A model generated the notes under the pieces. It did no database searches and was not told the DNA's origin. It saw only the letters and a list, made by a program, of their open reading frames with translations. The translations under genes and the position numbers were made by a program. Of a stretch of 64,000 nt of DNA, positions 26,330-59,580 are shown in pieces. Position 1 is the stretch's first letter, and the number at the start of each line of letters is the position of its first letter. The stretch covers positions 15,073,173-15,137,172 of the forward strand of contig NC_068991.1 in NCBI RefSeq assembly GCF_001194135.2, read 5' to 3'. The DNA comes from Octopus bimaculoides. Its lineage: Eukaryota.

Positions 26330-26377
<48 letters not shown>

Positions 26378-31002: not shown

Positions 31003-31037
<35 letters not shown>

Positions 31038-32528: not shown

Positions 32529-32559
<31 letters not shown>

Positions 32560-37230: not shown

Positions 37231-38479
37231 ACACATACATATACATACATACATACACATATATAAAATATACTTTAATTGAAATAAAGCTTCCCCAAAA
37301 TTAAACATATTTAATATAATAAATGTGAATGTTAGTGAATCACACTTTTCCAACTTTAATAAACCCTTTCCACTGGAAGCACAAGGCTTCGAATTTTGGG
37401 GTAAGGGATTAAGTCGATTACATCAACCCAGTATGTAACTGGTACTAATTTCTTCGACCCCCGAAAGGATGAAAGGCAAAGTCAGCCTCAGTGGATTTCA
37501 AACTCAAAACCTAACAGCAGATGAAATACCACTTAGCATTTCACCCAGCATGCTAATGATTCTGCCAGCTCACTGCCTTACTATAAAATAATATATAATA
37601 AATGTGAATGTCAGTGTGTCACACTTTTTCAATTTTACTCCTAGAGGCCATAGCCCAACATATCAAACCATTTTGGAATCAGGCTGACTCCGTCAGTAAA
37701 TTAAAAGCATTCCGGGTTGAATCTAGACCCACAATCCTGAAATTTTGGATTCCCAAGTTTTCATTACTGTGACTGCTTTGGGCAATTTTTTTACATGACT
37801 TTTTGCAACAAATTTTTTTGTACGATAATAATTTTTGTAATCTAAAAACCAACTCTGTGAATAAATTAAAACATTCCAGGCCAAATGTGGACCTGCAACC
37901 TTGAAATTTTGGATTCATATGTCTTCATTACTGCTATTGTTTTTGGCGATTTTTTTTACATGAATTTTTGCAACAAATATAATCATCATTGGTATCCAAC
38001 TCTGGAGGAAACAACTGCAACAAATTCTCCAAAACAAGTCAGAGATCTGTTTGCAGATCTTCCCATTCAGGGTCAGTTGCTTGAAAGCTATATACTAGCT
38101 TAAAAGCCAGCCCTATAAGAGAACTGGACTGTACCTTCAAAGTATTCAAATTATTTATTTTAAAACACCCAAGCAAATTATTCTGTGAGATAACCAAAAA
38201 TAGGTCCTAAGTAGGTAATATGTCTGATGAAGAGAACAAGGAGGACGGGATAGGATCTGTGGAAAAGTGATGACATTTCAATGCAGCTAAATAATGGGGG
38301 TGGAGAATGAAGAGTATTAGGGGCCAAGCTTATAGGATACCATTAAGTTAATATCCTATTACGAGCACTACATTATGTTGGTGGCCACGAGACTTACCAC
38401 CCATCAGTCGATATAGGCATACAATAGGCAAATAGGCACCTTGTGTCTGTGAGATATAATCTTTTGTTTATATTTAATC

Positions 38480-38860
38480 TTTCACTTGTCTCAGACATTC
38501 GACTGCATCCATGCTGGAGCACCACCTAGAAGCATTTTAGTCCAACAGATCAACCCTAGTACTATTTTCTTTGTAAAGCCTGGTACTTACTCTATTGGTT
38601 TCTTTTGCTGAACCGCTAAGTTATTGGGACATAAACATAACAACACCAGTTGTCAAGCGGTTGTGGTGGTGGACACACACACACACACATTATATGACAG
38701 GCTTCTTTCAGTTTCTATCTACCAAATCCACTAACAAGGCTTTGGTCAGCCCAAGGCCAGAGTAGAAGACACTTGCTCAAGGTGCCATGCAGTGTGACTC
38801 AAACCAGAACCATGTGGTTGGGAAGCAAACTTTTAACCACACGGGCCATGCCTGCACCTG
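38480..38860 (-). mobile_element. tRNA-derived SINE family 1
   Basis: Reverse complement of the full family body. Confidence 0.82.
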
Positions 38861-40891
38861 GCTAGGAAGTCTGCTTTGGAATCACAAGATCCTGAGTTCA
38901 ATGGTGTGCAGCATTTCTTAAAGTTTCGAGTCTACCCGAGTATTGTGTGTGGAGCTGAGTAAACAGAGGAACTGCAGAGAAACCAGTCTGATAGGCTTTA
39001 CCTGCAATGCAGAACTCTTCCAGCCTTGTCACACTATCTAAGTGATGCTGATTCTACCCAAGAACTTGGTATACGTGTCTGTGGGAATTTAGCCACATAA
39101 CATGTTATGAGTATGTAGGCGGTTTAATTGATCAAAAATAACAGCTGAATACTCCTCGTCGAAAGTGACGGAGATCCATTATTTGAAAGCAATACTTACA
39201 GAATTGTGAAACTATTAAGTCTTTCTGTTTGTTTTTTTAGTGATGAAGGACCAGGATAGATAAACAATGCCTCTATGGATCCCGTAGTGATGCGGGAGGA
39301 GAAAAAAGTGGGGGAGAAAAGATAATCTTTGAAGTATCAAAATACGAAAAAAACAAAAAAAACACTAATGACATTGATCGCCTACGATCTGTATTTTTAT
39401 AAATAAATGTTCTTAATTTAACATTCAAATCATTATTTTCTTGGTATATTAATTGTGTGAATTAGATAATTTTTTCACATGTGCTTTTTGTTAACAATAA
39501 CTCCCACGTTGGTTTTTCAGTTTAAAGAATTCACATATCCCCTGATGATCACTCACATGTCTTATTTTTCTTCAGGTTTTTGTTGCACTTTTATATAGGA
39601 CAGAGTAACACCACCAAAGCAACTTGTCAAAAATAAGGTGGAGGAATAAAGATTTTCAGCAATAAAACAAAATTCATTCTGATGTTAGTTTTACAACGCT
39701 TCCAGCACGAGTTATGTTTTCTTGAATTTCATTTTTAGAAGACGGGAATCAAACCAAATTTCTGACAAATTACACAAGAAAGGTATGGATTAAGGTATAA
39801 GAATCAAAATCCTCATGACACTTCCACCCCCATATTCATGTCTAGAGTACATAAGTCCTCTGATTTGCAAGTGGATTTGTGGATTTCCTTTAAAACAACT
39901 AAAACAGAAAATTCATTTAAACATTCTTTCGACATTCACAACGCCTTAACCAAGACTAACCTCTTTATATATATATATATATATATATACACAAACACCC
40001 ATTATGTGTGTGCGTGTATAACACACACACATACAGACGTATATACTTTAAAATGCCTACATAAACACAAGCCACACATGCACGCACGCGCATTTTATAG
40101 ACATAACTGAAGGCGGGTGGAAGGAGATAGGTGTTTAGACGGAAGGGGGAGAAGGAAGAAGAAAAGGTAGAAGGCGGGTGTTGCGACGGAATGAAGGCAA
40201 AACAGAATAGTGGAATGATGAGGATTTACGGAATGAAGTCAATCACCAACGACGGAATGAAAATGGACATAATGTCGGAAAAGAAGAGAGAGAATGAGAT
40301 TAAACTGCTAGAAAATAAAATGACGATTATGGAATGAAGAACAGCCCGAAAGGGACACACAGTATTAGAAATCCATTAATGACATAAAATAAGGAAAAAT
40401 AAAAAATATCGGAAATAATAGAATCATATACATAAACACACACAGCCTTGTGTTGACTTCAGATTACGAAGCCAAAATGCAAATCCTTTCTAATGTGCAA
40501 ATTTTTATTTAATATTCCAATTTTGTTAATATGCCAAAATATTTCAGATCATTTTAATGGTTTGAAAAAAAAAAAAAATTTTTTTAATTTAGGTTCTTTT
40601 TGAACCGAAAACCTTAGACCTAGTATTTGACTGAGGAAGCCCTATATTCCGCAAACTCCTTCCTGTCTGTCTATAAGCAATTTACAAGTCAAAATCTTTG
40701 CAAGAATTTTTAATGGTTCAAAAATGACAAAATAAATACCTAAATAATACGAATTTATAATTTTAGCTTACATAATCAAAGCTGAAATTGGACTTTTGAA
40801 CCAGGTGTCCTATATATATATGCGAGTAAAAATAAATACAAAAAAGGTGGTTTCTTTGTATGATTGTGTATAGAGGAATATATTATTTTGT

Positions 40892-41145
40892 TTAAAAGAG
40901 TTCCAACACTGTCTGTTTTTTTATGTTTTTTTTATATTCCTGCAGAACCAATTTATATATTTGATCCTTTATATTGAACACTCAATATTTCATCTACATT
41001 CAATACTTTCTTTCATGGTGCCATCCATTTTTATTTTATTTTATTTTATATTATATATTGTATATTCCATATTCTATACCCCACATTGGTTCTGCAGGAA
41101 TATAAATAAAACATAAAAAAACAGACAGTGTTGGAACTCTTTTAA
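40892..41145. mobile_element. TTAA-flanked MITE with ~60-bp terminal inverted repeats
   Basis: TTAA|AAGAGTTCCAACACTGTCTG...CAGAACCAAT (40892-40952) and its reverse complement (41085-41145), which abuts a gap. Confidence 0.78.
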
Positions 41146-42138
41146 NNNNNNNNNNNNNNNNNNNNNNNNNNNNNNNNNNNNNNNNNNNNNNNNNNNNNNN
41201 NNNNNNNNNNNNNNNNNNNNNNNNNNNNNNNNNNNNNNNNNNNNNNNNNNNNNNNNNNNNNNNNNNNNNNNNNNNNNNNNNNNNNNNNNNNNNNNNNNNN
41301 NNNNNNNNNNNNNNNNNNNNNNNNNNNNNNNNNNNNNNNNNNNNNNNNNNNNNNNNNNNNNNNNNNNNNNNNNNNNNNNNNNNNNNNNNNNNNNNNNNNN
41401 NNNNNNNNNNNNNNNNNNNNNNNNNNNNNNNNNNNNNNNNNNNNNNNNNNNNNNNNNNNNNNNNNNNNNNNNNNNNNNNNNNNNNNNNNNNNNNNNNNNN
41501 NNNNNNNNNNNNNNNNNNNNNNNNNNNNNNNNNNNNNNNNNNNNNNNNNNNNNNNNNNNNNNNNNNNNNNNNNNNNNNNNNNNNNNNNNNNNNNNNNNNN
41601 NNNNNNNNNNNNNNNNNNNNNNNNNNNNNNNNNNNNNNNNNNNNNNNNNNNNNNNNNNNNNNNNNNNNNNNNNNNNNNNNNNNNNNNNNNNNNNNNNNNN
41701 NNNNNNNNNNNNNNNNNNNNNNNNNNNNNNNNNNNNNNNNNNNNNNNNNNNNNNNNNNNNNNNNNNNNNNNNNNNNNNNNNNNNNNNNNNNNNNNNNNNN
41801 NNNNNNNNNNNNNNNNNNNNNNNNNNNNNNNNNNNNNNNNNNNNNNNNNNNNNNNNNNNNNNNNNNNNNNNNNNNNNNNNNNNNNNNNNNNNNNNNNNNN
41901 NNNNNNNNNNNNNNNNNNNNNNNNNNNNNNNNNNNNNNNNNNNNNNNNNNNNNNNNNNNNNNNNNNNNNNNNNNNNNNNNNNNNNNNNNNNNNNNNNNNN
42001 NNNNNNNNNNNNNNNNNNNNNNNNNNNNNNNNNNNNNNNNNNNNNNNNNNNNNNNNNNNNNNNNNNNNNNNNNNNNNNNNNNNNNNNNNNNNNNNNNNNN
42101 NNNNNNNNNNNNNNNNNNNNNNNNNNNNNNNNNNNNNN

Positions 42139-42188
<50 letters not shown>

Positions 42189-43845
42189 CCACACAAACTC
42201 ACATGTGCGTGCGTGTGTAGATAAACACAGAGAAACGTGGATGCATTAATTCGTTGTCATAAAATACAAACACTTTTATAGAAAGACACAGAAGTCCTAT
42301 TTCCAAAACAAAAAAAAATTTTAGACTCAAGCACAAAAATCAGAAAAATCCTCTTGACACAGTAAATGAAAGCGAAAAACAAAAAAATGGGAGTGCATAT
42401 TGTTTACATACATGCGCGCACACACACACCACACATTCTATGTATGTATGTACTTGTGTATAAATTGATATGTATGTGTGTGTGGGTGCGTGTGCATGCA
42501 TACGCGCGTGAACGTTTTTTCCCACCAAACATACACAAAATCACAAAGGACGGCCACTTGATTAACTTCGACGATCGACACAAGGCTGCAAATATTTATG
42601 GAGGTCGGCGAATTCGAAGCAAAACCAGTCGATCGCTTCAAATGACCATATTTACTATTAACCTCAAGTTACACACGATGACATTCATTCGACCATAGCG
42701 TGGCGTGTCTGTGTGTGCGTGCATGTGTATGGCTAACATCAGCAGCGATGACTTCGTTAAATGAATGCTCAGAGGTAGTTTTCGGTAGTTAAAATGGCTA
42801 TGCAAGCTACACAAGAACAAACCAAATATACAGACCACTGATAGAAAGACATAAAAAAAAAAATTGACACAAACAGATACCCACCATCTGTGTCAGTTTA
42901 AAAATTCTGTGGAGGTATTTCGGCGGAATTCTGGTGGAATGTTCAGAAAATGTTTGCGAATTTTCTGTTCGACGCACAGGGATTCATGCGATTAAGCAAA
43001 ACAATTATTTTCAATTTTTTTTTTATATATAATTCTCTCCTCCATTCCGATAAATCCTAAAATTTCCCCTCTTTTTCGATTTTTTAAGAGTTTAAAACGC
43101 GGACAACACGATTTTTTTGTTGTTGTTTTTTTTTTGCTCAAATCCCAGCAATGGATCATACCTGGGTGCATCATCAACTATTAAACGTATTTATGAAGAG
43201 AAAAATATTGAAAAACAACCAAGAGCGACGGAAATGCGAGAAAGGTGTCAGGTGGTCGCGGGATGTGGTAAAAACAGCTAAATTGCCCTTAAATCACACA
43301 CAATTTTTCTTTTATTTTTTTTTGCATAATCGTATGAATTCCCGCGTGTAGAACACAAATTTGCAAAACTTCTCTGAAAATTCCAAAAAATAAAATACAA
43401 ATTGAGGGGTTATTATATAGGATGCTTAAACCAGAATCCCCCGTTATTTCTTCTAATACACACAAACGTGTTTTGTGTGTGTGATGTGTGTGCTCTCTCA
43501 CACACAGACAGCGTGAAAGATGTTATTTACGGCTGTCAAGAAGACCCTAGGAAGAAAAAAAAATATCCTCAAATAAGAAGACTTGGTCCTTAATTTGGCA
43601 GAACGGACACCAGCAAATAGCATTCTAAGAACAACCGATAGTATTAAACTGTGCGACGGATTAATAGACAACGGCGAGGTTTGAAACTCAATAACATAAA
43701 TAGTCGTTCAATGACTCGAGCAATCCCTCAGAGTCGCATATTTCTTGACCCAGGAAGAATGAAAGGCAAAACTGGATTCAGTACGACTTGAACACTGAAC
43801 TGGAGAAAACAGTCGAAAGGATTTTGTAGACGTTTAGATGTAGAC

Positions 43846-43998
43846 CGGTGGTTCCCAACATATGGTCCGCAAAGGCAGTAAGTGGGATTCCATGAACTAA
43901 ATTCACTGACAGACCTTTCAAGATACCGGGGTCCGTGGGAAAACTCATTTACAAAAAGGGGTGGAGGGCCTTGGTAGTGAAAAGGTTGGAAACCACTG
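43846..43998 (+). mobile_element. Short hAT-type MITE
   Basis: Termini CGGTGGTTCCCAAC / GGTTGGAAACCACTG; flanks ATGTAGAC and TTGTGGAC (6/8 match). Confidence 0.7.
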
Positions 43999-46900
43999 TT
44001 GTGGACAATTCTCACTTCGCCACCGATATAGCAGTTATGTCCCTTTGCCTTATGAAACGCCTGCAGCTGTCAATTTTTGCTTTTATACATGCACGTGTGT
44101 GTATGTATATATATATATATATATATATACACAAACATTCACACAGAATATTATATTACACAGTATACATACATACACACAGCATACATACATATTATAT
44201 ACACATACACACAGTATACATACATATATATTAAATACACATACACACTTTTGTGGGGGCGTGTACAGTCCCTTTGCTACCCCGAGCCGACTAAAGTCTT
44301 GAATAGTTTTGGTAGACAAACACTTAAAGCCCGTCGTATACGTGTGATTGAGCATGTGTACACGCATGTTTGCCCCCCACCCCCACCCTCAACGGCTTGA
44401 CATTCAGTGTTGGTTTGTTTACGTCAACCTACCAAAGCGATTCAGCAAAATTTACTTGATAGAATAAGCATCAGAGTTTAAAAACAAAAATTACCAGAAC
44501 CGAAACGCCACTGGAAAGTGGGTTAAAAATCAAAACTAGCACCAGCGGTATTTGAACCCCCAGCACGACGGTCACAATAAACGTTTTTTGACCGTACTTC
44601 TACGGATTCTGTCATTACCATCAATACCACTGCCACCAAACGTGGTCATAAAACAACCTGAATTCAACTTATCTAAATCCAGTGATGTGTTATTATTAAT
44701 GTCCGTCTCTACCATTATATACTGGGAGCAAATAACGTGAATGTCGCATTGGTACAAGGCCACAAATTCATGAACGATGTAGTGAGAGGAGAACGACAGA
44801 GGTATACAAGAGAGTTAACTGGACGACTACTAAAAATAATTTCGGTCTTCTAATTTTATTTAATGCAAGGTCAAACAATTATTCTATTAGTTCATTTATG
44901 ATTACCCACCTCCGCCTCAAGTGCGGAGAGCGGGATGAGCATTAACACCCATGCAATCTATCGAAAGTATATGACAAACAACAGATGGTGCCTAAAACGC
45001 GGTGCATCAATCGACCAGCTAGAAACAACAGCCAAGCATCCAATAACACACACTCAATAAAGACAGTGCATAATGAAATACGAGTGAATGTGTGTGTGTG
45101 TATTACACACACACACAGAGGAGTGAGCGAACAAACGAAAGTGGCACTCCAGGCATTTTGTAAGAGTAACATTATTTAATAACAGTTTGACTCAGCTCCA
45201 TATGACTTCTCTAGTTATCTGAGATGGGTTCGTTTGTTCTATGATGCCACAGAGTCACACACACACACACACACAGAGGCCACGGCAGCGTGAATGCCTT
45301 TGTCAAGTCCGTTTAATCAGTGCAAATCCGGTGCCAAAAAAACTAAACAATATACAAGAAAGGTAATTATTTTTGGTGTTATTTCATCGAACCAAAGCTG
45401 GAAAGGCCAAGTTTAACCCTCAACGAAATTTGAACTCGGGTCTTAAAGGGAGGTAATCAAGATATATTTCCGTCTCGATCATTCCAGCGCTTAATTAATA
45501 ACAATTATCGTATTATCGGTTCCAGCCAGAGGTCGTGGCCATGCTGGGGCACCACCATTCATTTTTTTTTTTTAAGGCACGAAACTTAAAAATTTTTTTT
45601 TTCTTTACTGTATGGGATATTATACTCGACTCATATTTCACTAACTCCCCCCCCCCAAAAAAAAATGAAAATTAAATTCGACTGTCGATGGGATTGATCT
45701 CTCAACGATTAGAACTCATAACAGCAGTAGTAGTAGTAGTAGATTCGAATGCAGCACAAGGTTTGGCATTTGCAAAGCCGTAGGCGTGCGTAAATCGACG
45801 GAATCGAACACCTAAGTGTGTTACTGGTACATGACATTTCATGATCAACAAAAAGATTGAAGAAGAAAAGTCGACCAAAGGCAGGTTTCAACACCGATTC
45901 ATATCTCATTAGTTTTACTAAACGAACAGCAATATTACTAATAATGTTTCGTCTAAGCACAAAAATTCAGTATACGAGGGGAGATGGAGCTCAGAGATAA
46001 AAGGCACAAGTTAGATTGAATTGATTTCATTTAGATTTGTTTTGCTTTTACTCTATTGACCCATGAAGTTAAAAGGATCGATTTCACTGGAGATGAAGAA
46101 ACACCAAGAAACAAAAAATTATGCTGAATGACTACAGTACCACACATATTAGATTAGATATGTGTGTGTGTGTCTAGACATACATACCTACATAAATGTA
46201 CCCTCCCGTAACTTACAGGATTTTTTTTTAATTTAATTTACTACAAAACACCTTTCCGATATAAATATTCATTTCTCTGTAAGTTATGAAGAAACAAAGT
46301 CGGAGTGGACACTTGTGTAGGAATAAATAAATAAATAAATAAATAGACAGAGAGTAGAGAGCACCTGCGTTTGGTGTCCGCCTCCACATCCCCCAAATTG
46401 TTCCCTCTTAACTTTCGGATAAACGCGTATTTTTTTCTTTATAGTATTTAGCATATATGTTTTCGAGAGTAGGTTACTATTATGCTGATAAAATATATAA
46501 AAAGAAAAATATATATTTGGCGGGAGGGGGAGTTTCGAATCAATCTTCATTGAAGTAATAACCTACTTGGTGACCATGAATTTCTGTAGCTTTAAATTTT
46601 CACCTTTTTTCCCCCTCTCCTTTCTACTTATATTTGAAACTTCAGCATTACGTAATCTACACTTTCGAAAACGTAATTCTGCAAAATTTCAGTTGAGGAA
46701 ATAAGCATTTTAAATACAGAAAAGTCGAAAAGAATGAGGAACAGAAAGATTCGTAAAGCCTTAAAAATAAATATATAAATAAAACTTTCATGAAAGCAAG
46801 TAGAAAAAAAAGGACCAAACCGTAATTATGGTGTGTTTAAGTTAAATTATAGCAATTAACATTAAACTGAAGGATAACAGACGAATTTTTAGTCGAGTAA

Positions 46901-48772
46901 GCCGTGACTTAGAAGTCACTATCAACTTTTCCTTTCAAGGATTTAAACACACACACTAGTGTAAAATATATATATTTTATATATATATATATATATACAC
47001 ACATGCCTACACACACATTTTAATTCGATGGCATCTGAATGCACGTGGCGCGGAAAGTAACGACACAGTAAAATCAAACTGCCTTCTGTATGTATCATGT
47101 ATTGAGTACACACACCCCTCACTTTTGTTCGTAAACAAACACGTGTGTGTGAGAGAGAGAGAGAGAAAGAATAATGGAATTATAACGATTTAATTATATA
47201 TTAAACATCATAAGTATTCCTAGGAAGATAACTGACAGCTAACAAAACGGTTAAGTATCAACCTATTTTTCCATGTAAAAACAAATTTGAAATTCTACTG
47301 AAATGTACAGGGAACACACAAAAGTTTCGTGGAAAGCGATTCGATAAATAAGTCGAAATTAATCACATTGTGCTAGATGGAAAATTAAACATCACTACAA
47401 AGAACACAAAACAATAATCGTAGGCACAAAGAAAGAAAAGGGTACATAAGCCAATAAAATTTATCGACCCCCACCATCCTAGGTATGAAATGCTACCACT
47501 GCCTATAACTGGCATGTGCGGACTGCTACTTAATGCCTATAACGAAAAGGCGGCCAAACTGAGTTCAGCGCGACTTTGGTATAGAGGTTAAGGCCACACA
47601 GTGTAGAAAATATATACAAGAGTTGGAGCACGACGGGTTGGAGGTAAAGCTGACATGCAAAACGATTCGACTGTAAAATTTAAAATAAAATAATAATAGG
47701 ATATAACAACAAATGAAATAAAATTTTGAAACCTGAATGTGTAGATTGCTTTCTTTCCTTGTTTGTTTTCCTTCTAATTATGTGCACATCAACAATGCTT
47801 TTTTTTTTTATATAAGAAGACCCCCGCCGTGTGTCTGTGAGTGAAATTGAAGAGTTTCCAAAGGAAAGGTGCAAAGTAAAATCATAGGAAAAAACGATCG
47901 AGATTTACGTATTCACGTGTGTGTGTGTATAATATTTATATATATATATATATATACACGTATGTGGGTATGCATGCATCTTGTGAATGACGCGGTAGGC
48001 GGGAGGTTAAATTAACTAGTACAAAAGAAGAAGGACAACAACAAAAATCAACGCGAAGCAAACGCAACTGAAACAGAAAAACATGGAGGAAACGAAAAGT
48101 GGACGTAAGTGGTTAGTTAAGAGTGAAATTTAGCTACTACAAATGCCGATACATGCGTTTACACGAGCATTTACAATGTTTCACTCTAACTACCCTATAC
48201 TTATATAGTAGATTTTGCGTGTGTGTGTGTGTGTGTACACATGCATGCATATACACACACCCTCTGCATATAACCTTAATTCGATTCATAAACTAAGAAT
48301 AGTTGTGCAATGCAACACAATAAACGAACTAATAGAAAGAATCACACATTGATGATGATGATGGAGGGAATGCGTTTATTTGATGTTTCCAGGTGGAAAA
48401 TAAAGTTGAGTATTGACTTTCCGCCAGTGTTAGGTATACATTAGATAACACTGGTGTGTGTGAAAGAAAATTCATCAAGGTGTGAGACGACAGAGTTCCC
48501 GATTCGACATCACACTTGCACTTCTTATTCAATCACTTCTGGTAGACAGACTATTTTATTATAATTTCATAAATGTATGTATGTATGTGCATATATACGC
48601 ACACAGAGACGCGCGCGTGCACACACACACACAAATCATTCATGATCATTGTTTTAACATCCACTTATCCATCTTTACTTTGGATCAGACAGACATACAC
48701 GCACACAAAAAAAAAACTGATATAGTCGTGATATATTTATTGAACATGTGTAACATTCTTACAAGTGCACAA

Positions 48773-48813
<41 letters not shown>

Positions 48814-48899
48814 GCTCTTTTATAAATTAGACTTCCAGCATAGGTACTTTGCGCATTAGATACATTATAGACACTTTTGTGTGTAAGCACAGAGATATC

Positions 48900-50066
48900 A
48901 AAATAAGTATTATGTATCCGTAATTTTTCAATATAGTCCTTGCTTGTTTCAACTTCAAGGGAAAATAACGTTTCCAGTTTGGGGCATGAACCACATTTAT
49001 GCACCCCCTTCTTTCGCTTCTTGGCCCGTAGCAAATCTATTTATCTCTTAAGGTTTCTTTCACCGAGGCAATCAAACAGGTGACAGTGAGAGGGAGCAAG
49101 GTCAGAAGTATGTCGACGATCTTCCAGTACCTCAAATTTCAGTTTCAGAATAACAGTCGTATAAGAACGGGCCATTATGTTGTAAACAACACAAATATCT
49201 TTCAAGAGAACTTCTGCGTGTTTTGCTTCGAAATGCAAGACAGAACTTGTCATGTAACATCTTGCTATAGTGAGCACGGTTTACAGCTGAGCTTTCTCTC
49301 TTGGTTAATACTTCAGTATTGGTCTTCGCTAATCCAAAAATACTATCTGCATCGATTTTCATACTTCGGCTGGCAATAAGGTATCCAGGTTAAAAATCCT
49401 AAGTGACGATCCCCCGCCCCCACCAAAAAAAAAGATTCAAAAGACCTTGGTAGATTTCAAATGATTTTTGTTAGTGCAATTTCGTTTGTTGTTCCGAAGA
49501 TCCATCATGCACAAAACTATATCAATGTCAAGTTCAATGTTGTGAACAATTTTCATGGTAGAACCAAGGTTAATTTGCATATAACGAAATATACCACCAA
49601 TCAATAGTCAGGTATCCATTCAACATAATCAGGTCACTGACTCTTTCAGCGTTGTCATCAGTACAAGACAAGTCATGCATACAGCTCCTTTTTCTGATCC
49701 GCGACACTTGAGCGACCATTTTTGGAATTTTCAATCCATTTGTAGAACCCGTTATGACAAAATACTATTTCCATATCGTGCTAGAATCCTTCGATCGATT
49801 TCGGTTACTAATACACATTAAGCCCACAGAAAATGGGTCACAGAAAGCTTACGCTTCTTTGAGAAAAAAAAAAAACAGAAAAGAAAAAGAAGTGGCAATG
49901 GTTGAACGTAATAACTACAACACCATTACTGACGTTTCAAGTTCAAACCTGTACAATAATGACAAGAGGGGAAACCACAAATAGTGATGCGCGCGCAACA
50001 ACTTTTCCCGCTAATAGGGAAAACAATTTTAAGTGCATTGGGGATAATGAATGACTCACCTTCGTA
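48900..50066 (-). mobile_element. Near-full-length decayed mariner element, different family from the 20-kb copy
   Basis: 5' terminus TACGAAGGTGAGTCATTCATTATCC (50066-50042). Frameshifted transposase: RRILARYGNSIL, FYKWIENSKNGRSSV...DDNAERV, NRAHYSKML.DK, LKFEVLE...SDLAPS.CHLF. The left terminus is not clear. Confidence 0.8.
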
Positions 50067-50853
50067 CGTACGTACGTACCTATTACATACGTGCATGTAA
50101 AGGTGTCAATTTTTTGTGGTATTCTAAGGCTAAGTAAAGACCTCAATAAATTTCAATGTCTGTCTTCAGGATGGCTAAACATACACGTAGGCAGCGATGT
50201 TAATAAGTGTATGTATGTATGTATGTGTGTGTGCATAGATTTATATTTCTAATTTGCTAAGTAAAAGATAAACATTTTGTGTAGACGTATGAGGGTGTGT
50301 GTAAATGTGTGTATTGCTATAATACGATATGTGCAAACATAGAGAGAGTGTGTGTACAAACACACAGCTGATGTTGGACAGGCAACCAGCCTGAGTACAG
50401 AGATAGCCAGCCAGCCAGCCAGCCAGCAGAAACATGTGCCATCATCAAGGACTCGCCTGCCTCTTTGCATCGGTATGCATTCATTTATGGCGACGACATG
50501 GACAGCCATGTTCCAAGATTGGGAGAGGGTGGGGGACACCCGTCAGACATCGGGGTGGCTACAAGACTTCATGTGAAGAGGAAATTTTCAAACAGCATAA
50601 CAAAAAGAAAAATAACTATATACCCATTATATGCAATATATATGCTTATGAATGTATCTATACATAAGTATCTCCATAAATATATGCATATCTATAATTA
50701 TATACATAAATATACACACATATCAATAAATATATATATATATATATATATACATCCATATGCACAAATATTTCGAATTTGCTAAATAGATGATTCTTAA
50801 GAGTGACTAGATTCATATAAACACATCTCAGAACACGTACACGCATATATTTC

Positions 50854-50888
<35 letters not shown>

Positions 50889-51071
50889 CAAACATATTTA
50901 TATAGATTTTTTGGCAAGGATTTCAAAAGAACAATGAATAACAAAATATTATGAAAAACAAAACTTGTTTGAAGACTTAATAGGAAATTTAGGAACACGA
51001 ACGCAAAAATAGTTTCATATGAAAAAGCATTTTAATCTTAACAAGAACGACAGGGTGTGTGTATGTGTGTG

Positions 51072-51104
<33 letters not shown>

Positions 51105-51879
51105 GCAAGACAGACAGACATCACCTAGATAAGGTGTCTGTTAGTCAATGTTGTTTGCAAAAGTGTAATTTTAGGTGCAGGAGGGGGCGAAATCATGAAA
51201 ACTGAGACCACATCATCCATTACAAAATGTCAGTAAATTGATTTTGACCTTTTTTTTTCTTTTTCTACTTTTTTGATGTGTGTTAAGGTGGATATCGGGG
51301 ATCATTTAGAAACTATTTTGTCTTCTCTGCAGAAAAAGTAAAGTGCTTTTGAAGATGATACTTAACCCCCCAGATCAAGCACAATCGAACAGGCTCAGCA
51401 ATATCAAAGACGTTCCTGAAATGACCATTGCATTGATCTATCAAACCTTAAGAACCATTGCAGCTACCCTTCCGTTTTTTTTAAATCAGACAATACTTAT
51501 AACAAAGACTACATTATTTAATGTTCTTCAGTCTTTTTGTTTTGTGAAGGAAACGATCGGATGGTTAGCTGCGCTCTCTAGTAGATCGAACGCCACGAAA
51601 AGGCCTTCTGGTTGATCTAAATAATTTTTGTTTGCTGATGTTCTTGTAGCCTCTCTCCCAACAATTTACAAGAGACTATAAGACATAAGAACCTATAACT
51701 CAACGTGAAAAAACGAAAGACGCCGATGTATACACACTTGAATTTATGTGTGTCTATGGCGTACAGTCAATATTAACATGGATATATCTCACAGAAAATG
51801 TAAAGGACAATAATGTGTTCTTATTAAGATGACGGGTGTATACATGATCGTTAGCAAAATCCCCCGGAAGAATGGGAGA

Positions 51880-52010
51880 GAGAAGTGTTCTGATACCGGC
51901 GGGAATCGAACTCGGGTTTGCAAAGGGACGTAACTGACTACTAAGATGTCAAAAACGTGATATCAGACGCTCTACCGATTCTGCCACCCAGCCATCGACC
52001 TTGTGAAAAC
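51880..52010 (-). mobile_element. tRNA-like SINE head (family 4), not a tRNA gene
   Basis: A-box TGGCAGAATCGG and B-box GAGTTCGATTCCC are too far apart for a cloverleaf. Related fragments at ~31040-31230, ~34440-34630 and ~37380-37580. Confidence 0.6.
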
Positions 52011-52376
52011 AAATGTTCATTTCTTTTATTTGCACCAAGAGAACAAGAAAAATAGAATTTGACATTTACAAAACAAACAATAATATTTAAGTTAATAGAT
52101 ATTTTCGAGATTTTTAGAAACTGTTTAAATAAATTTGCTTCTTCATACACTGAAAATAGTAAATAAATCACCCTAAAATGATAAAAGCCCTAATATTAAA
52201 ATTTCAAAACAAGTAACAAAATTATATACATACGCCAAATCGTACTTTTTTTTTAATAATGGTTATAAAACAAGACAAAAGAAAAATATTTGAATGATGA
52301 TTACTCTGAAATTCGAAATAAAGAGAAAAAAAATATTTATTTTAACTGATAGCAATTTCGTTTGGGGAAAATGGCC

Positions 52377-52423
52377 TTTGCATTTTATACACACAGAGAA
52401 GCATTCACAGACAGACATAGCTC

Positions 52424-52467
<44 letters not shown>

Positions 52468-52483
52468 CTGCTTTTAAATAAAG

Positions 52484-52523
<40 letters not shown>

Positions 52524-52716
52524 GATAAGCATACAATAACATGCACTTCAGCACTGGCCAGTGCATTTTATACAGATACACACAGAGGAACATTCACAGA
52601 CAGACATAGATTTATATATATATAAGCTGCTTTTAAATATATATATATATATATATATACCCATTCACATAGAATATATACAGAGATAAGCATTAAAATA
52701 ACATGCACTTCAGCAC
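52377..52716. repeat. Degenerate tandem duplication built around (TA)n blocks
   Basis: CATTCACAGACAGACATAG...ATAAGCTGCTTTTAAAT...CAGAGATAAGCAT...AACATGCACTTCAGCAC occurs twice. Confidence 0.8.
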
Positions 52717-53939
52717 ATCCACATAGCAGACATACATACACACATATATACACACACACACACACACGTGTATGTGTGTGTGTTTGTAAGTATATATGTA
52801 CACATAACTATGCAATTGTTTTCCACGTCCAATGATGGAAGGTCTCACTCACTACCTGTGTGTGACCGTTATAAAAAAGCCACATTTTCTCTCAAACATT
52901 TGAATTCCACACGCATGCATCTTTATGTATTGATTGTAACACCGAGACGTTCGTTCTTGGAGGTGTTTGCGTCTAAAATAATAATAATGATGATAATTAT
53001 AACTAAAAGTCTACCTGCAAACACAGCTAGATAGATAAAAGAATTGAAATAAATTGCAAAGTAAAGCAGCAATTACTATTATTGAAAAGGTGTACATCAT
53101 CTTATCTACTAGTCAGTCAGCATCTGTGAAGTTTAATAGAAGATGAGAGAGGGCTGAGGTATTATTATTTATTTTTTTATTTACTGTGTATGTAGTAGTT
53201 CAGTGCTTTTATAAAAAAAAAAAACGTGTTTGAATGGGTGAGAGTGAACATGTTTAGGATGAAGAAAGACACTTCGCATTATTTCATACATGTATCCATT
53301 TATACATGTACTTACGTTATGTATGTATGGTAAGTGACACGAGACCTACTTTTTTTCCCCCCTTTCATGATGTATATATATATATATATATATACAGCAA
53401 GGCCAATCTATCTAATAAACCACACACCACTCTATTCAAAAAAAAAAAATCTAAACCACACCTCAAAAAGCCATCATCGAACCCCCCAACACACACACAC
53501 ATACCGCTAACAGAGCTTATCAAAGAGGCAAACCAGACAATGCCAAGCATATCCACAACTGCATATCACCACATGCGAACCCGCCCCTCTCCCCGTCAAA
53601 CGCAGAGGACTCAAAACTGCATTATCGCTACTCACTCGGGCCAGGAAAACCAAAACCACCATCAACTATCATCACTATATATGAAACCCCCCTACACACA
53701 CACACACATACAATCGCCATTGCAATCATCACACCACACTACAGCATGCCCACCTTATTATATCTAACCGCCATATACTAGCCGAAAATCTACATCGGAT
53801 TCATCATTCCCATCCACAGAACATCGCCATTATTCATTCAATGAACACAATAACAAGCTAAAGTGAGCTAGCACCACATTCACCATTAATCACACCTCAC
53901 TACATCCAAATATATAAAAATACCAAACAGCTACCATTG

Positions 53940-54350
53940 AATGAGCGGAGAGAGAAAGGAGGAGAGGCGGGAGAAAGAAAGAATGATAGGAAGGAAGGGT
54001 GGAGAAGGTGAAAAAAGAGAGGTGTATATAGTAATATAGAGAGAGGGAGATGATAAGAGTTAGCGACAGGGGAAAGAGAAGAGTGATGAGAAAAAGATTA
54101 TAGAGAGGGGTGAAGAGACATGCAGCATGGAGTGAACAGTGAGGGAGACACAAGACAGACATAACAAAAAGGGAAAGTGAAGAGGAGAGCGACAAGACTA
54201 TAAGAGGGAGATGGTGAGGGAGAGTCTATAAAGACAGAGCAAGAAATAAGGGGGTGCAAGGAAGTGTGTGTGTGTGTATGCATGTATCTATCTATATATA
54301 TATATATGCGAGAGAGAGAGAGAGAAAGAAAAATGAAAGAGACACAAATT
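53940..54350. repeat. Purine-rich (GA) tract at the start of intron 1 (CT-rich on the transcript)
   Basis: Almost entirely G/A on the + strand. Confidence 0.8.
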
Positions 54351-54494
54351 ACAAGACGTGGTACAATATATATATACATATATATAATGAGGGGTAAGAG
54401 CTGAAAAAATTAAAAGAAAATTTACAGATGAGGTTAATAACCTTCACTCACACCTACCTGCACTGCTTCAGAAATGGAGACAGAAAACTATATA

Positions 54495-54532
<38 letters not shown>

Positions 54533-54557
54533 CTTGCAGAGAAGAAAAAACACTCAC

Positions 54558-57507
54558 CAGAGTCCGACTTGACATTCTTCAAACACGTATCACAAAGTTG
54601 ATGTAGACAAGGTAAAAGTTTGGGGGCTTGTTCTTTGAATCCTGACCCGCACATGGTACATGCCATGCCAGCCGCTTGTTGTTGTTGTTGTTGTTGAGTT
54701 AGGCTCTGATTGTTGTTGTTAATATTAGTGGTTATAGCACTGCTAGTAGTAGTGGTGGTAGTGGTGGTGGTACTAGATGTGGTGGTTGTGGTGGTGGTGG
54801 GGGTGATGGTGCTGACAGCGGCGGCGGCGGTGGTAGTGGCGGCGGCGGTGGTGGTGGTGGTGGTGGTGGTCGTCGTCGTGGTAGAGTTTTGATCCTGTGG
54901 TTGTTGTTGGGATTGATGGGGGTGGTGCCTATTGGTACTTGATCCTGCACATTCACCCCCATCGTCCGTTGGTTTGGCCGCAAGTGTCATTGTCAACGTC
55001 GGCGACGACAATGATGCTGCTGCTGATAGTGGTGCAGATGATGATGATGATGACGACGATGATGATGATGATGATGATGCTGATAGTTGCGACGTCGCAT
55101 CCGTCGCATCCGTCGCCGACAAGAGCGAACTTGTGGACGCTGTTAATGTCGACGACGACAATGCCGCTTGTTTTTGTGGTTGTTGCTGTTGTTTTTGTGG
55201 TTGTTGTTGTGGTGGTGGTGGTGGTTGTGCCGGTGGTGTCGGCGGCGACGGCGAGCCCGTTGCTGTCAGGTCAGCAACAACTACTTCGCCCGCTCCTCCC
55301 ACGACAACGACGCCAGGCGTAGTCGTAGTGTCGGCCGCCAGCACAGAAGCACTGCAACCACCTCCTGTCACGATGATGGCGGCGGAGGAGGAGGATGATG
55401 TCGTTGTCGCTACGGCCGCTCCGGCCACTGCTTTCTGTTGTTGTTGTTTGTCCACCGTGTTTTGTTGTTGTTGTTGTTGATGCTGCTGCAGTTGCTGTTG
55501 TTGCATATCTGTACTACTGGCAGTGGAAGATGATGTTGTTGCTGATGATGATGATGACGACGAGGCAGCGGCACCCGTTGCCAGGTTCGCACCTCCTCCT
55601 TCGACTCCACCATCACCGTCCGCCATAGAAGAAGACGAAGAACAAGAAGCAGAAGAGGTACGGCTTCCAATAATAGTAGTAGCAGTAGTAGTAGTAGTAG
55701 TAGCAGTAGTAGTACTAGTGTTGTTGTTGTTGTTAAGGTGACTACAACTACCACCACCGTTCGAGGCGGTATTGTCCTTTGCACTACAAGTTAATCCCGC
55801 CGACTTTACTATCGCCGATCCGTCAGCGGAACCAGCAGCAGCAGCAACGGTAACGCAGGAGGAGGAGGAGGCGGAGATGTTGCGGGTAGGAGTGGCGTCG
55901 CTGTTGATAGTGCTGCTGATGGTGGTGGTGCTGGCTGTGGTGTTCGTGGTAGTGGTGGTGTTGTCGACGACGACAGGAGAAGTGGAAGAAGAAGTGGAGG
56001 AGGAGGCGGCAGGGGAAGAAGAGGCAGCCGTGTCGACAGCGATCGCGCTTATGCTGCTGACGGAGGCGGCAACGCTGGCAGAGTGTGTGACGATGGTGGA
56101 AGCAGTGGTGAGGGAGGAAAGGGATGAGGAGGCAGAGTCGGTCGTGGTGATGGTGGTGGGAGCGGCGGTGGTAGCGGCAAGAGTAGAGGAAGAGGAAGAG
56201 GAAAAGGCACAGGAAGAAGCAGCGACTGCGTTATTGTTGTTAGAGATGGAGTGGACGGGGACAGAAGCGGAGAAGGAGGGGGAAGCGGAAGGGGAAGAGT
56301 CAGCAGTGACTGCGTTGTTGTTGGTGTTGACGGCGGCGGTGAGGGAGGGAGGAGGAGAAGAGAGAGGAGTGGAAGAGGAATGGTGAGTGGAGTGAGAGGA
56401 AGATGCAGCGACTACGTCGTTGTTGATGATGATGGCGGTGGCAAGGACGGCCGAAGACGAGGTGGATGGGGAAGGAGGGGAAGTGACAGCTAGAAGAGCA
56501 GTGTCGGCGTTGTTAGCGACGACACGAGAGGACGAGGAGGAGGAGGAAGTAGAAGAAGAAGAGAAGGTTGAGGCACGGGAAGTGGAAGTGTTATGAGTGA
56601 TGGTTGTAGTGGTCGTGTTGGTGGCGGCGGCGGCGGTGAAAGTATCATCGTCGGCAATGTCGTTTACGGTGGCGGTGGTGGCGGCGGCAGAGGCTGCAAC
56701 GGCAGCCTCTTGTTGTGTTTCTTGCTGCTGTTGTTGTCGTCGTGATGTCGTTACGGCAGCGGCGATCGACACACGAGAGAAGTTATTTTCACTATCGGCA
56801 TTGCTTTCATCACCACCAACAACATAACCACCATCGCTCATTGTCTCGTAAGAAGTTCTTACACCGCCGGTCGACATACTATCATTGATGCTGCTATTAT
56901 CATCATCATCATCATCATTACTATTATTATTATTATTATCATCAGAAATAACATCATTTTCTTCATCTTCCACACTACCGCGACCTTGTTGTTTTTGTTC
57001 TTGTTGGTTCTGAGAGTGTTTATTATCGGTAATACTTACAGTCGAGATCGAACTCGTTAATAGATGATTACTTTTGCTGTCGTCAGTATTTTGAACGGAA
57101 TCGGTGGTCATTGCACCAGTTTCGACAATCTCCGTACAAGCTGCTGTTGCTGTTGTAATTGTTGTTATTGTTGACATGTCATCATAACAATCTGTCGTAT
57201 AATTAGTATTAATAATCATGCTGTCTCTGGAATTTACGGGTTCGCTTCTCCGTCTCTTCGGTGCCACCGGTTCATCGTCTTCGTCATCTGCTGCTGTTGC
57301 TGTTATCACCCCGGGGCCACTGTTAGTGTTGTTATTGTTGTTGTTGTTGTCGTGATCGTTGGTTTTAGCGGCCTCTGTAGTTATAACATTGTCGCTGTTG
57401 TTGTTGTTGTTGTTATTACTAATGGCCTCTTTGGTGACGGAATAACTATCTTCGGACGATAACGACGGCAGAGGTTTACCACGAAGATCGCCCTCACCAT
57501 GATCCAT
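54558..57507 (-). CDS. TRIM33: TIF1-family TRIM E3 ligase, coding exon A: ~949-aa low-complexity N-terminus plus RING residues C1-C6
   Basis: Open frame of 2950 nt from ATG at 57507 (context AAGAAGATGG, in-frame TAA 12 nt upstream) to CTMC...LLPCLHQLCDTC (RING C-x2-C...C-x-H-x2-C-x2-C). It ends at donor TCTG|GTGAGT (GT at 54557-54556), phase 1. The RING part is near-certain; translation of the whole N-terminus is inferred. The symbol is a family-level assignment. Confidence 0.8.
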
Positions 57508-59580
57508 CTTCTTGTTGGATTATATATCTATAAAGAGAAGAATAGATTATATATATGCACACACATATATATATATACATGTGTATATATGCCATAAATT
57601 TTAGAAAAAATTTGTTCGATTATATCGACGCCAAAGGGATGGAAAGTTAAAAGTTGACTTCGGCCAGATTCGAACTAGGAACGCAACCATTACCCGTATA
57701 CATACACATATAAACACTCATACACACACATATATATATATATATATATGCATGCACATACTCACACACGTGTATATATTCATATGTATACAAACATATA
57801 CATTCAGATGCATACAACACACACGCGCATTTTTTTGTTTGTTTTCTCTATTTACTGAAGTAGTATTATGTATATATAATGTGCCTAGAAATGTTTTTGT
57901 TTTATATATACATATCTTCTAAGCAGGAGCGAAAAGTGTTTTTGTGTGTTTAAATGTGTCAGTTATTTGTTCATAAGTGTAAGTAAAAATATATGTATGT
58001 ACACACGTGTGTGTATACATTGTGCAAAGTTTATGTATATATATATATTAAACTTTTAAATTTTTTTTATTGTTTTTTAATTTCCAAACAGAAGGCGCCG
58101 GCATTAGAAACGAAAAAGGGCGTCTTTGAGAGAGATTTGCTGACCACGTCTACATCACGAGGATGTAAATGATGATGGCTGATAATGAATAATCGTACAA
58201 ATTTCTTCTTCAAAGGCAGCGAATTTTACACGAATTACAGAAAGTTGGGATTAAGTGATGTTCATGCATTATTTTTTTCTTCTTCAAAGAAATATTCGAT
58301 GCCGTTTATTGAAATGGTATTTTGGATTTTTTCAACCAAGGAATCAAAAAACCAGATCGCACATTCGCTCTACCCAGCCCGTAGTATTCTGTGGAAACTT
58401 AAAAGATTTTTAATAGTAAATAAAAACAAATAAGGAATGTAGGGTGAAAGTGGAAATAGTTGAGAAGAATAAGAAGAAGATAAATGCAATTTTAGATCTT
58501 TATGGCGTCGGATAGTGTTCTGAATTACATACTTTAATGGCTCTAAAAAGAAAGGCATGACAAAATATCACACAAAAAAAAAATTGGAACGCAAAAGTAA
58601 AATGAAGTCTCCAGAAACACTTCATTCCTTATAATATATATGTATGGATGTATAACACATACACAATACTATGAATGAAATGCTATAACGGATATTTTAC
58701 ATATGTCTAAAAGTGTGTTTGCGTTTTTTAATGGAGGGATGGAATGGCTGATAATTTACATTGCCTATATATATATATGTATGTGTGTGTGTGTAATGTA
58801 CATTGCCTATATATATAAATATATATATGTAATGTACATTGCCTATATATATATATATATATGTAATCTACATTATATATATAAATACGTGTGTTGAATT
58901 TAAGAAGAAAAAGGAAATGTATAAACAGATAGGAAAACACCAGATGTACAGTAAGCAATAAGTTGCCTTAAAATATACAAAGAGAAATGGGAAGGAAATT
59001 CACTAATTACTTTATTTTTATTATATATATATATATGTATATATATATATGTGTATNNNNNNNNNNNNNNNNNNNNNNNNNNNNNNNNNNNNNNNNNNNN
59101 NNNNNNNNNNNNNNNNNNNNNNNNNNNNNNNNNNNNNNNNNNNNNNNNNNNNNNNNNNNNNNNNNNNNNNNNNNNNNNNNNNNNNNNNNNNNNNNNNNNN
59201 NNNNNNNNNNNNNNNNNNNNNNNNNNNNNNNNNNNNNNNNNNNNNNNNNNNNNNNNNNNNNNNNNNNNNNNNNNNNNNNNNNNNNNNNNNNNNNNNNNNN
59301 NNNNNNNNNNNNNNNNNNNNNNNNNNNNNNNNNNNNNNNNNNNNNNNNNNNNNNNNNNNNNNNNNNNNNNNNNNNNNNNNNNNNNNNNNNNNNNNNNNNN
59401 NNNNNNNNNNNNNNNNNNNNNNNNNNNNNNNNNNNNNNNNNNNNNNNNNNNNNNNNNNNNNNNNNNNNNNNNNNNNNNNNNNNNNNNNNNNNNNNNNNNN
59501 NNNNNNNNNNNNNNNNNNNNNNNNNNNNNNNNNNNNNNNNNNNNNNNNNNNNNNNNNNNNNNNNNNNNNNNNNNNNNNNN

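What the first reader, a model, noticed from the sequence alone, without database searches (positions are those of the whole stretch)
54661..57507. ~949-aa low-complexity extension in front of a TIF1/TRIM33 RING, encoded by one 3-kb exon
Seen: one frame stays open for 2950 nt through dozens of trinucleotide tracts (polyN, D, Q, S, T, A, P), while the other two minus-strand frames give only short ORFs. The ATG has a strong context (A at -3, G at +4) and an in-frame stop just upstream. A PKRRRS NLS-like motif sits at ~aa 83-88. Known: vertebrate TRIM24/28/33 and fly Bonus carry the RING near the N-terminus. Inference: this lineage added a very large intrinsically disordered region, probably by microsatellite expansion, to a chromatin-reading E3 ligase. 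It could alter condensate behaviour, localisation or turnover. A shorter protein from internal Met628 (MADGDGG, ATG at 55626, weak context) is the alternative.
Basis: partly seen in the sequence, partly recalled or inferred. Interest (0 to 1): 0.7.

Follow-up and report, generated by a model that had tools for sequence, protein, structure and literature searches.

The report
Giant low-complexity tail on TIF1 ligase
The first coding exon of a TRIM24/TRIM33-like chromatin E3 ligase gene carries a real 949-codon open reading frame of degenerate triplet repeats ahead of the RING finger, about 5 to 60 times longer than in the relatives compared, but whether it is translated could not be tested here.

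Summary
On the minus strand one frame is open from ATG 57507 to a consensus splice donor at 54558|54557 (2950 nt). It then joins in frame, across a 42.2-kb intron, to exon 2 (12351-10923). Exon 2 completes a C3HC4 RING and adds two B-boxes and a coiled coil, with best matches to TRIM33/TIF1-alpha proteins (E 1e-72).

The open frame is not chance. No stop occurs where 21 are expected (0 of 5000 codon-position shuffles had none). A random-phase test that keeps local composition gives P between 1e-10 and 5e-5. Thirty of 31 tandem arrays in the exon have periods divisible by three, against 49 of 171 elsewhere in the window.

The 949 residues are rich in Ser, Thr, Ala, Asn and Gln, acidic, without domains or homologues, and predicted disordered. 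In the 16 fetched relatives that show the first RING half (five animal phyla), plus one unidentified metagenome contig, 16-190 residues precede the RING.

Translation, the lineage (cephalopod was only assumed) and any condensate role are untested. Repeat decay shows no third-position bias, so the amino-acid sequence seems weakly constrained. The main rival is a start at Met948, which has a strong context. This is an extreme variant of a known pattern, of moderate to low interest.

The parts
57520..57522 (-). In-frame TAA stop five codons upstream of the ATG. It lies downstream of a possible acceptor (ttatag| with AG at 57529-57528), so no upstream exon can extend this frame.
   Evidence: Direct reading of the sequence. 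The open frame begins SNKKM.
57505..57507 (-). First in-frame ATG, in the context aagaagATGg (A at -3, G at +4).
   Evidence: There is no ATG in any frame between 57527 and 57507.
54661..57507 (-). 949 codons of low-complexity coding sequence: Ser 20%, Thr 17%, Ala 13%, Asn 7.5%, Asp 6%, Gln 6%; net charge -48; 10 aromatic residues. It has three compositional blocks. Residues 1-260 are rich in Asn, Ser, Asp and Thr (GC 0.42). Residues 261-620 are rich in Ser, Thr and Ala (GC 0.56). Residues 621-949 are rich in Ser, Thr, Ala, Gln and Pro (GC 0.55).
   Evidence: No Pfam domain. No homologue among 1.84 billion representative proteins apart from one spurious hit. pLDDT is below 50 for nearly all residues.
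57244..57261 (-). PKRRRS, residues 83-88: the only compact basic patch, resembling a nuclear localisation signal.
   Evidence: Position confirmed. Function is inferred from the motif only.
55624..55626 (-). Internal in-frame ATG of Met628 (tcttctATGg, T at -3, weak context).
54664..54666 (-). Internal in-frame ATG of Met948 (gctggcATGg, G at -3 and G at +4, strong context), two residues before the first RING cysteine. It is the main alternative start.
54558..54660 (-). First half of the C3HC4 RING (C950, C953, C967, H969, C972, C975), with the family motif PKLLPCLH. The exon ends in phase 1.
   Evidence: Pfam zf-RING_5 and zf-C3HC4 match residues 950-980 below their curated cut-offs. tblastn matches from five orthologues at 40-56% identity.
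54556..54557 (-). Splice donor GT, in the context CTG|GTGAGT.
12352..54557 (-). Intron 1, 42,206 nt, splitting the RING. It contains interspersed repeats of about 400 bp, (TA)n and (CA)n microsatellites, and assembly gaps.
   Evidence: The intron lies at the same place in the RING in relative L002, where it is only about 340 nt.
10923..12351 (-). Exon 2 (acceptor ttttcag|AC, donor CTAG|GTAAGT). It encodes the second RING half (C988, C991), B-box 1, B-box 2, the coiled coil, and then poly-Ala, a roughly 55-residue poly-Gln tract and a Ser/Asn-rich tail.
   Evidence: Pfam B-box at 56.7 bits and Trim66-type B-box at 28 bits. TRIM33/TIF1-alpha hits down to E = 1.6e-72 among named full-length proteins and 7e-82 for unnamed ORF calls; tblastn.

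Best explanation
This is the first coding exon of a single TIF1-family gene (TRIM24/TRIM33-like; the Drosophila counterpart is Bonus) on the minus strand.

Shown:
- A 2950-nt exon runs from ATG 57507 to the donor at 54558.
- It splices in phase across 42.2 kb to exon 2.
- Together the two exons encode a complete C3HC4 RING, two B-boxes and a coiled coil.
- The 949 codons ahead of the RING form a patchwork of about 30 decayed triplet-type microsatellites, with periods of 3 to 21 that are nearly all divisible by three.
- These codons have been kept free of stops and frameshifts in one frame.

Inferred:
- The region grew by replication slippage inside coding sequence.
- Selection removed frame-breaking changes but put little constraint on the exact residues.
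- It is translated from Met1 as an acidic, Ser/Thr/Ala/Asn/Gln-rich, intrinsically disordered N-terminal tail.
- The ligase and chromatin-reading work is done by the conserved RBCC core (and presumably PHD-bromodomain) behind it.
- The tail most likely acts generically: as a flexible, heavily modifiable spacer with one NLS-like basic patch, which could tune solubility, self-association or access to the RING. It probably does not act as a specific binding domain.
For: - Frame, start, stop and donor were read directly. The splice to exon 2 is in phase and completes the RING.
- TIF1 identity: E 1.6e-72 (named TRIM33/TIF1-alpha proteins) to 7e-82 (unnamed ORF calls). tblastn finds both exons.
- Open frame beyond chance: 0 of 5000 codon-position shuffles lack a stop (21 expected). 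The longest ORF in 1000 dinucleotide shuffles is 325 codons. The random-phase test gives P from 1e-10 to 5e-5, and each third of the region contributes.
- Only frame-preserving repeats: 30 of 31 arrays have periods divisible by 3 and none has period 1-2. In the rest of the window the figure is 49 of 171, with 3.7% of bases in period 1-2 arrays (Fisher p = 2e-13).
- The tracts are about 10% decayed (56 mismatches in 187 tract codons). At that level of neutral decay about 7 nonsense changes would be expected; none is present.
- As a 5' leader the region would hold 9 further in-frame and 29 out-of-frame ATGs between Met1 and Met948.
- There is no strong internal acceptor and there are only two donor-like hexamers.
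- Disorder: mean pLDDT 32.9, with 929 of 983 residues below 50. No Pfam domain.
- Exon 2, undoubtedly coding, also carries poly-Ala, a roughly 55-residue poly-Gln tract and Ser/Asn-rich tracts. This gene therefore tolerates coding repeats.
Against: - No transcript, ribosome or peptide evidence was available.
- No orthologue of the extension could be retrieved, so frame conservation between species is untested.
- Mismatches within the tracts fall 25/14/17 on codon positions 1/2/3, with 39 of 56 non-synonymous. There is thus no sign of selection on the amino-acid sequence itself.
- Residues 301-600 are so rich in C at codon position 2 that few stops are expected there anyway (about 1.6).
- Met948 has a strong start context, and the invertebrate relatives have only 16-53 residues before the RING.
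- The single-sequence AlphaFold run is a weak test of disorder.
Confidence: 0.7

Rival explanations
1. The main protein starts at Met948, or at Met952. It would be made from a transcription start inside or just downstream of the repeat region. That gives a conventional TIF1 protein with the RING at the very N-terminus. The long upstream frame would then be used only in a minor isoform or not at all.
For: - Met948 sits in gctggcATGg, a strong context.
- All 16 fetched relatives that show the first RING half have short N-termini: 16-53 aa in invertebrates and 124-190 in vertebrates. A relative with the same exon structure has 17 aa.
- There are no homologues and no amino-acid-level constraint in the extension.
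Against: - This does not explain why 947 upstream codons stay open in the same frame, nor why only triplet-type repeats occur there.
- Only two residues would precede the first zinc ligand, fewer than in any relative examined (at least 16).
- From the upstream cap a scanning ribosome would meet 39 ATGs first.
Confidence: 0.15
2. Translation starts at Met628 (ATG 55626). This would give an extension of about 320 residues and leave the first 627 codons as leader.
For: It is an in-frame ATG with G at +4. The repeat-rich middle block contributes least to the open-frame statistics.
Against: - The context is weak, with T at -3.
- The first 300 codons give the strongest open-frame signal of all (log10 P = -5.2 with 60-nt segments). 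Their alternative frames carry 13 and 46 stops.
Confidence: 0.05
3. The frame is an accident of non-coding microsatellite DNA, or the exon length is an assembly artefact of a gap-rich draft genome.
For: - The window has 4268 N and many gaps next to (TA)n.
- Many triplet motifs here (AAC, ACC, AGC, TCC) are free of stops in all three frames.
- CAA-type repeats occur in all three phases, read as Asn, Gln and Thr.
Against: - All shuffle and phase tests reject chance.
- The repeat-period spectrum differs sharply from the non-coding remainder.
- There is no gap inside the exon, and no tract is longer than about 130 nt.
- The frame continues into a conserved RING and splices in phase.
Confidence: 0.04

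Closest known systems
Vertebrate TRIM33 (TIF1-gamma) N-terminal region
   Same: It is a low-complexity, domain-free stretch rich in Ala, Gly, Ser and Pro directly ahead of the RING. There are about 124 residues in the mammalian sequence (P0149) and about 155-190 in teleosts (P0219, P0127). The RBCC core behind it is the same, including the PKLLPCLH motif.
   Different: Here the stretch is 949 residues, 5-8 times longer. It is Ser/Thr/Asn/Gln/Asp-rich rather than Ala/Gly/Pro-rich, and strongly acidic (net -48). There is no sequence similarity between the two N-termini.
Invertebrate TIF1 homologues: Drosophila Bonus (from general knowledge) and the TRIM33-like or TIF1-alpha-like proteins of scallops, mussels, spiders, a brittle star and acorn worms
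   Same: They share the RING, B-box 1, B-box 2 and coiled-coil order, at 36-42% identity over the RBCC. Several also carry a poly-Gln tract after the coiled coil. The intron splits the RING at the same point in relative L002.
   Different: Those proteins have only 16-53 residues before the first RING cysteine. The PHD-bromodomain half could not be compared because it lies outside the window.
Coding-microsatellite low-complexity regions, such as the CAG/CAA 'opa' repeats of Drosophila developmental genes and the Asn/Gln-rich tracts of Plasmodium and Dictyostelium proteins (general knowledge; reviews found, for example PMC11285758 on low-complexity regions at protein termini)
   Same: Runs of single residues are encoded by degenerate triplet repeats. 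They sit at a protein terminus, are frame-preserving, show weak residue-level constraint, and are predicted disordered.
   Different: The scale is unusual: about 30 different tracts are strung together over 2.85 kb in one exon of an otherwise conserved chromatin regulator.

Membership tests
TIF1 subfamily of TRIM proteins (TRIM24/28/33/66, Bonus) | N-terminal C3HC4 RING finger | tested here: met
   The pattern is C950-x2-C953-x13-C967-x-H969-x2-C972-x2-C975-x12-C988-x2-C991 across the exon 1/exon 2 junction. Pfam RING models match the full length, but below their curated cut-offs (23.3 against 27.9 bits; 19 against 21). The PKLLPCLH motif is shared with TRIM33, and tblastn gives 40-56% identity.
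TIF1 subfamily of TRIM proteins (TRIM24/28/33/66, Bonus) | Two B-boxes (type 1 and type 2) after the RING | tested here: met
   PF25287 zf-B_box_Trim66 scores 28.0 bits (cut-off 27) at residues 76-106 of the RBCC query. PF00643 zf-B_box scores 56.7 bits, with two stretches.
TIF1 subfamily of TRIM proteins (TRIM24/28/33/66, Bonus) | Coiled coil following the B-boxes, homologous along its length to TIF1 proteins | tested here: met
   Alignments cover 87-97% of the 350-residue RBCC query and run to about residue 380-430 of the orthologues. The named best hits are TRIM33 or TIF1-alpha proteins. No separate coiled-coil predictor was run.
TIF1 subfamily of TRIM proteins (TRIM24/28/33/66, Bonus) | C-terminal PHD finger and bromodomain | not testable with these tools
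tblastn with eight full-length orthologues finds only exons 1 and 2 in the window. The 3' exons must lie beyond window position 1.
Translated intrinsically disordered low-complexity region of coding-microsatellite origin | Strong compositional bias with no globular domain | tested here: met
   At a 12-residue entropy threshold of 2.0 bits, 645 of 949 residues are masked, against 88 of 511 in the rest of the spliced protein. No Pfam hit. Mean pLDDT 32.9.
Translated intrinsically disordered low-complexity region of coding-microsatellite origin | Repeat units restricted to multiples of three, with one frame kept open | tested here: met
   30 of 31 arrays, against 49 of 171 outside the exon (p = 2e-13). 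Open-frame tests.
Translated intrinsically disordered low-complexity region of coding-microsatellite origin | Evidence of translation or of conservation of the frame in other species or individuals | not testable with these tools
   No transcript, ribosome or peptide data were at hand. No relative of the extension turned up in three protein searches, one exact look-up and one metagenome scan.
Translated intrinsically disordered low-complexity region of coding-microsatellite origin | Purifying selection on the encoded residues (excess of synonymous changes within tracts) | tested here: not met
   Tract mismatches fall 25/14/17 on codon positions 1/2/3 (chi-square p = 0.18), with 17 synonymous against 39 non-synonymous. 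Only the frame appears to be constrained, not the residues.

The most novel reading that the evidence does not exclude
A lineage-specific disordered arm of about 950 residues has been grafted onto the RING end of the animal's TIF1 co-repressor and is functionally important. For example, it might drive or tune nuclear condensates, or gate RING activity, in a genome rich in repeats and zinc-finger genes. Human TRIM33 forms concentration-dependent nuclear condensates and filaments (bioRxiv 10.1101/2025.01.02.630836). TIF1 proteins are also candidate cofactors of expanded zinc-finger repressor families (PMC10547256). A 5- to 60-fold longer tail could therefore change that behaviour.
Probability: 0.15. 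Interest if true: 0.55.

Novelty: new variant of a known kind. Interest (0 to 1): 0.3.

Why it matters
If the tail is translated, a deeply conserved chromatin E3 ligase and co-repressor would nearly double in size through slippage alone, with its catalytic core untouched. That would make it a natural experiment on how much disordered sequence a RING-first TRIM protein tolerates. It would also show whether such tails alter nuclear-body formation. For genome annotation there is a practical point: a gene model starting at Met948 would miss 947 residues. A model starting at Met1 cannot be checked by homology, so it needs RNA or peptide support. Otherwise this is an ordinary outcome of a microsatellite-rich genome.

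Tried and rejected
1. A protein search with the whole exon was swamped by low-complexity words: 8000 candidates, none significant.
2. An exhaustive HMMER search of residues 1-330 against 1.84 billion representatives gave one hit, P0121. It is an unrelated repeat protein and was judged spurious.
3. An exact look-up of the 1017-aa ORF found nothing on record.
4. A masked spliced query retrieved full-length TRIM33/TIF1-alpha proteins from many phyla. Nothing was closer than 42% identity, so no orthologous N-terminus could be compared. The search tool appears to return only proteins between 0.56 and 1.75 times the query length, which explains the short hits.
5. The 10 kb upstream of the best relative's exon 2 (L001) holds no RING first half. 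A second relative (L002) does, with a 17-aa N-terminus.
6. A metagenome scan with residues 1-330 found nothing.
7. The test for third-position bias in tract decay was negative. I therefore dropped the claim that the residues themselves are under selection.
8. A search for internal introns found two donor-like hexamers (57039, 56862) and no strong acceptor.
9. Rfam, tRNA and Pfam scans of the window and of intronic ORFs, run to identify the organism, found nothing.
10. TE origin of the exon is rejected: no interspersed repeat of the window touches it.
Full report
**What is there**

On the minus strand an ORF runs from ATG 57507 to a stop at 54454 (1017 aa). Read directly, the ATG lies in aagaagATGg, and an in-frame TAA sits five codons upstream (57522-57520). 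A possible acceptor (ttatag|, AG at 57529-57528) lies just upstream of that stop, so no upstream exon can lengthen this frame. The frame meets a consensus donor, CTG|GTGAGT, with GT at 54557-54556. The exon is therefore 2950 nt long and ends in phase 1.

The last 34 codons read CTMCGSGFKEQAPKLLPCLHQLCDTCLKNVKSDS, which is the first six ligands of a C3HC4 RING.

**The rest of the gene**

A second long minus-strand open stretch (12406-10922) begins behind a strong acceptor (ttttttcttttttgtcttttcag|AC, exon start 12351). It ends at CTAG|GTAAGT (exon end 10923). Joining 54558 to 12351 gives ...KSDS-D-CLKCPTC... in frame, which completes the RING. Two B-boxes and a coiled coil follow (Pfam). The intron is 42,206 nt long.

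The RBCC part hits TIF1-type proteins at E values down to 7e-82. With a longer, masked query it retrieves full-length proteins named TRIM33 or TIF1-alpha from hemichordates, spiders, echinoderms, bivalves and vertebrates, at 33-42% identity. tblastn with eight of these finds only two places in the window: 54666-54571 (first RING half) and 12367-11408. The PHD-bromodomain exons are therefore outside the window. That part of the 'chromatin reader' label rests on family membership only.

**Is the open frame more than chance?**

Yes, by four tests that control progressively more for composition.

1. The sense frame has no stop in 983 codons. The other five frames have 20-70.
2. Shuffling bases within each codon position keeps the coding-like composition. 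It gives 21.3 ± 4.1 stops and never fewer than 8 in 5000 trials. Dinucleotide shuffles never give an open frame longer than 325 codons.
3. Many of the triplet motifs are free of stops in every phase. I therefore kept all local sequence intact and asked only whether one constant phase would escape the stops seen in the other phases, segment by segment. P is 1e-10 with 60-nt segments and 5e-5 with 300-nt segments, and each third of the region contributes.
4. The repeat spectrum is that of coding DNA. Thirty of 31 tandem arrays inside the exon have periods divisible by three and none has period 1 or 2. In the rest of the window only 49 of 171 are divisible by three, and dinucleotide arrays cover 3.7% of bases (Fisher p = 2e-13).

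The tracts are not young. They deviate from perfect repeats at about 10% of sites (56 mismatches in 187 tract codons). At that level of neutral decay about seven nonsense changes would be expected. No interspersed repeat of the window overlaps the exon, and there is no assembly gap inside it.

**What the 949 residues look like**

- Composition: Ser 20%, Thr 17%, Ala 13%, Asn 7.5%, Asp 6%, Gln 6%; net charge -48; only ten aromatic residues.
- Three blocks differ in composition and GC. Residues 1-260 are Asn/Asp-rich and the most complex. Residues 261-620 are Ser/Thr/Ala-rich. Residues 621-949 are Ser/Thr/Ala/Gln/Pro-rich.
- No Pfam family matches.
- An exhaustive search of residues 1-330 against 1.84 billion representative proteins gave a single hit, to an unrelated repeat protein.
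- A single-sequence AlphaFold model has mean pLDDT 32.9, with 929 of 983 residues below 50. Only the RING half reaches 64-72. This agrees with disorder but is a weak test.

**Constraint**

Within the tracts, mismatches fall 25/14/17 on codon positions 1/2/3, and 39 of 56 change the residue. There is thus no sign of selection on the particular amino acids. What is preserved is the frame. This fits a slippage-built, loosely constrained tail better than a specific interaction domain.

**Comparison with relatives**

In the fetched full-length proteins the first RING cysteine follows:
- 16-21 residues in scallops, mussels and acorn worms;
- 25-53 residues in P0123 (an unnamed Logan protein, source organism unknown; 25), a brittle star (34) and a spider (53);
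- about 124 residues in a mammalian TRIM33;
- about 155-190 residues in two teleost TRIM33 proteins. There the stretch is also low in complexity (Ala, Gly, Ser, Pro).

An unannotated relative on a metagenome contig (L002) has the same exon structure. Its first exon ends just after the sixth RING ligand, it has 17 residues before the first cysteine, and its intron is about 340 nt. The intron position is therefore conserved across at least these two relatives, while the long N-terminus is peculiar to the window's lineage. In kind, it is an exaggeration of what vertebrate TRIM33 already has.

No closer relative than 45% identity could be retrieved.

**Where does translation start?**

There are eleven in-frame Met codons. 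Met1 has a strong context and is the first ATG of the exon. Met948 (gctggcATGg) is also strong and lies two residues before the first zinc ligand.

For Met948 to be the main start, transcription would have to begin inside the exon. From an upstream cap a scanning ribosome would pass 10 in-frame and 29 out-of-frame ATGs. A Met948 start would also leave unexplained why 947 upstream codons stay open in the same frame, and it would give a shorter pre-RING segment than any relative examined. I found no convincing internal intron: two donor-like hexamers and no strong acceptor.

**Conclusion**

The most likely reading (about 0.7) is a genuine 2.95-kb first coding exon whose product begins at Met1. 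It would carry a 949-residue disordered, acidic tail rich in Ser, Thr, Asn and Gln ahead of a conventional TIF1 RBCC core. The tail would have been generated by triplet slippage and kept only in frame.

The main rival (about 0.15) is that the abundant protein starts at Met948 from an internal promoter. A Met628 start (about 0.05), and chance or assembly error (about 0.04), are less likely.

A functional role in condensates is plausible by analogy. Human TRIM33 forms concentration-dependent nuclear bodies and filaments (bioRxiv 10.1101/2025.01.02.630836). TIF1 proteins are candidate cofactors of expanded zinc-finger repressor families (PMC10547256). Nothing here tests that role. The finding is a real and unusually large variant of a known pattern, and its interest is moderate to low until RNA, ribosome or peptide data show that the tail is made.

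Noticed in passing
window 12352-54557 (minus strand); L002 486-829: The RING finger is split by an intron right after its sixth zinc ligand. The intron is 42.2 kb here and only about 340 nt in an unidentified relative on a metagenome contig. The position is therefore conserved while the size differs more than 100-fold.
   Followed up: partly
window about 11100-11235 and 11385-11410 (minus strand, exon 2): The undoubtedly coding exon 2 contains a poly-Gln tract of about 55 residues (with two His), a poly-Ala run and a Ser/Asn-rich tail between the coiled coil and a conserved VYYPP motif. This shows that the gene tolerates coding triplet repeats. Several orthologues also have poly-Gln at this place.
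   Followed up: partly
window about 3230-3880, 4560-5180, 6130-6500, 13800-14380, 24150-24640, 41100-42150, 59050-59600: Seven assembly gaps (4268 N in all) are nearly all flanked by (TA)n or (CA)n microsatellites. This is a short-read draft assembly. The gap at about 59,050-59,600 lies 1.5 kb upstream of the ATG and may hide promoter or 5' UTR sequence.
   Followed up: no
window 25096-25488, 30205-30606, 33456-33854; also 5149-5440, 14369-14755, 38469-38859, 61999-62389, 63547-63947; also 18225-18505, 22281-22566, 27275-27528: At least three families of interspersed repeats of about 250-400 bp (77-95% identity, both orientations) fill the introns and flanks. ARAGORN finds no tRNA-like gene, and four ORFs in or near these repeats have no Pfam match. 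The element types were not identified.
   Followed up: partly
window 30931-31572 (minus strand): A 213-aa ORF inside intron 1 ends in poly-Asn and poly-His runs. It has no Pfam match and is probably another triplet-repeat patch, without the statistical support of exon 1.
   Followed up: partly
window 54897-56386 (plus strand): The antisense strand of exon 1 carries ORFs of 141-204 aa rich in Val, Glu and Asp. They are mirror images of the sense-strand repeats and are interrupted by 20-70 stops per frame, so they are not candidate genes.
   Followed up: yes
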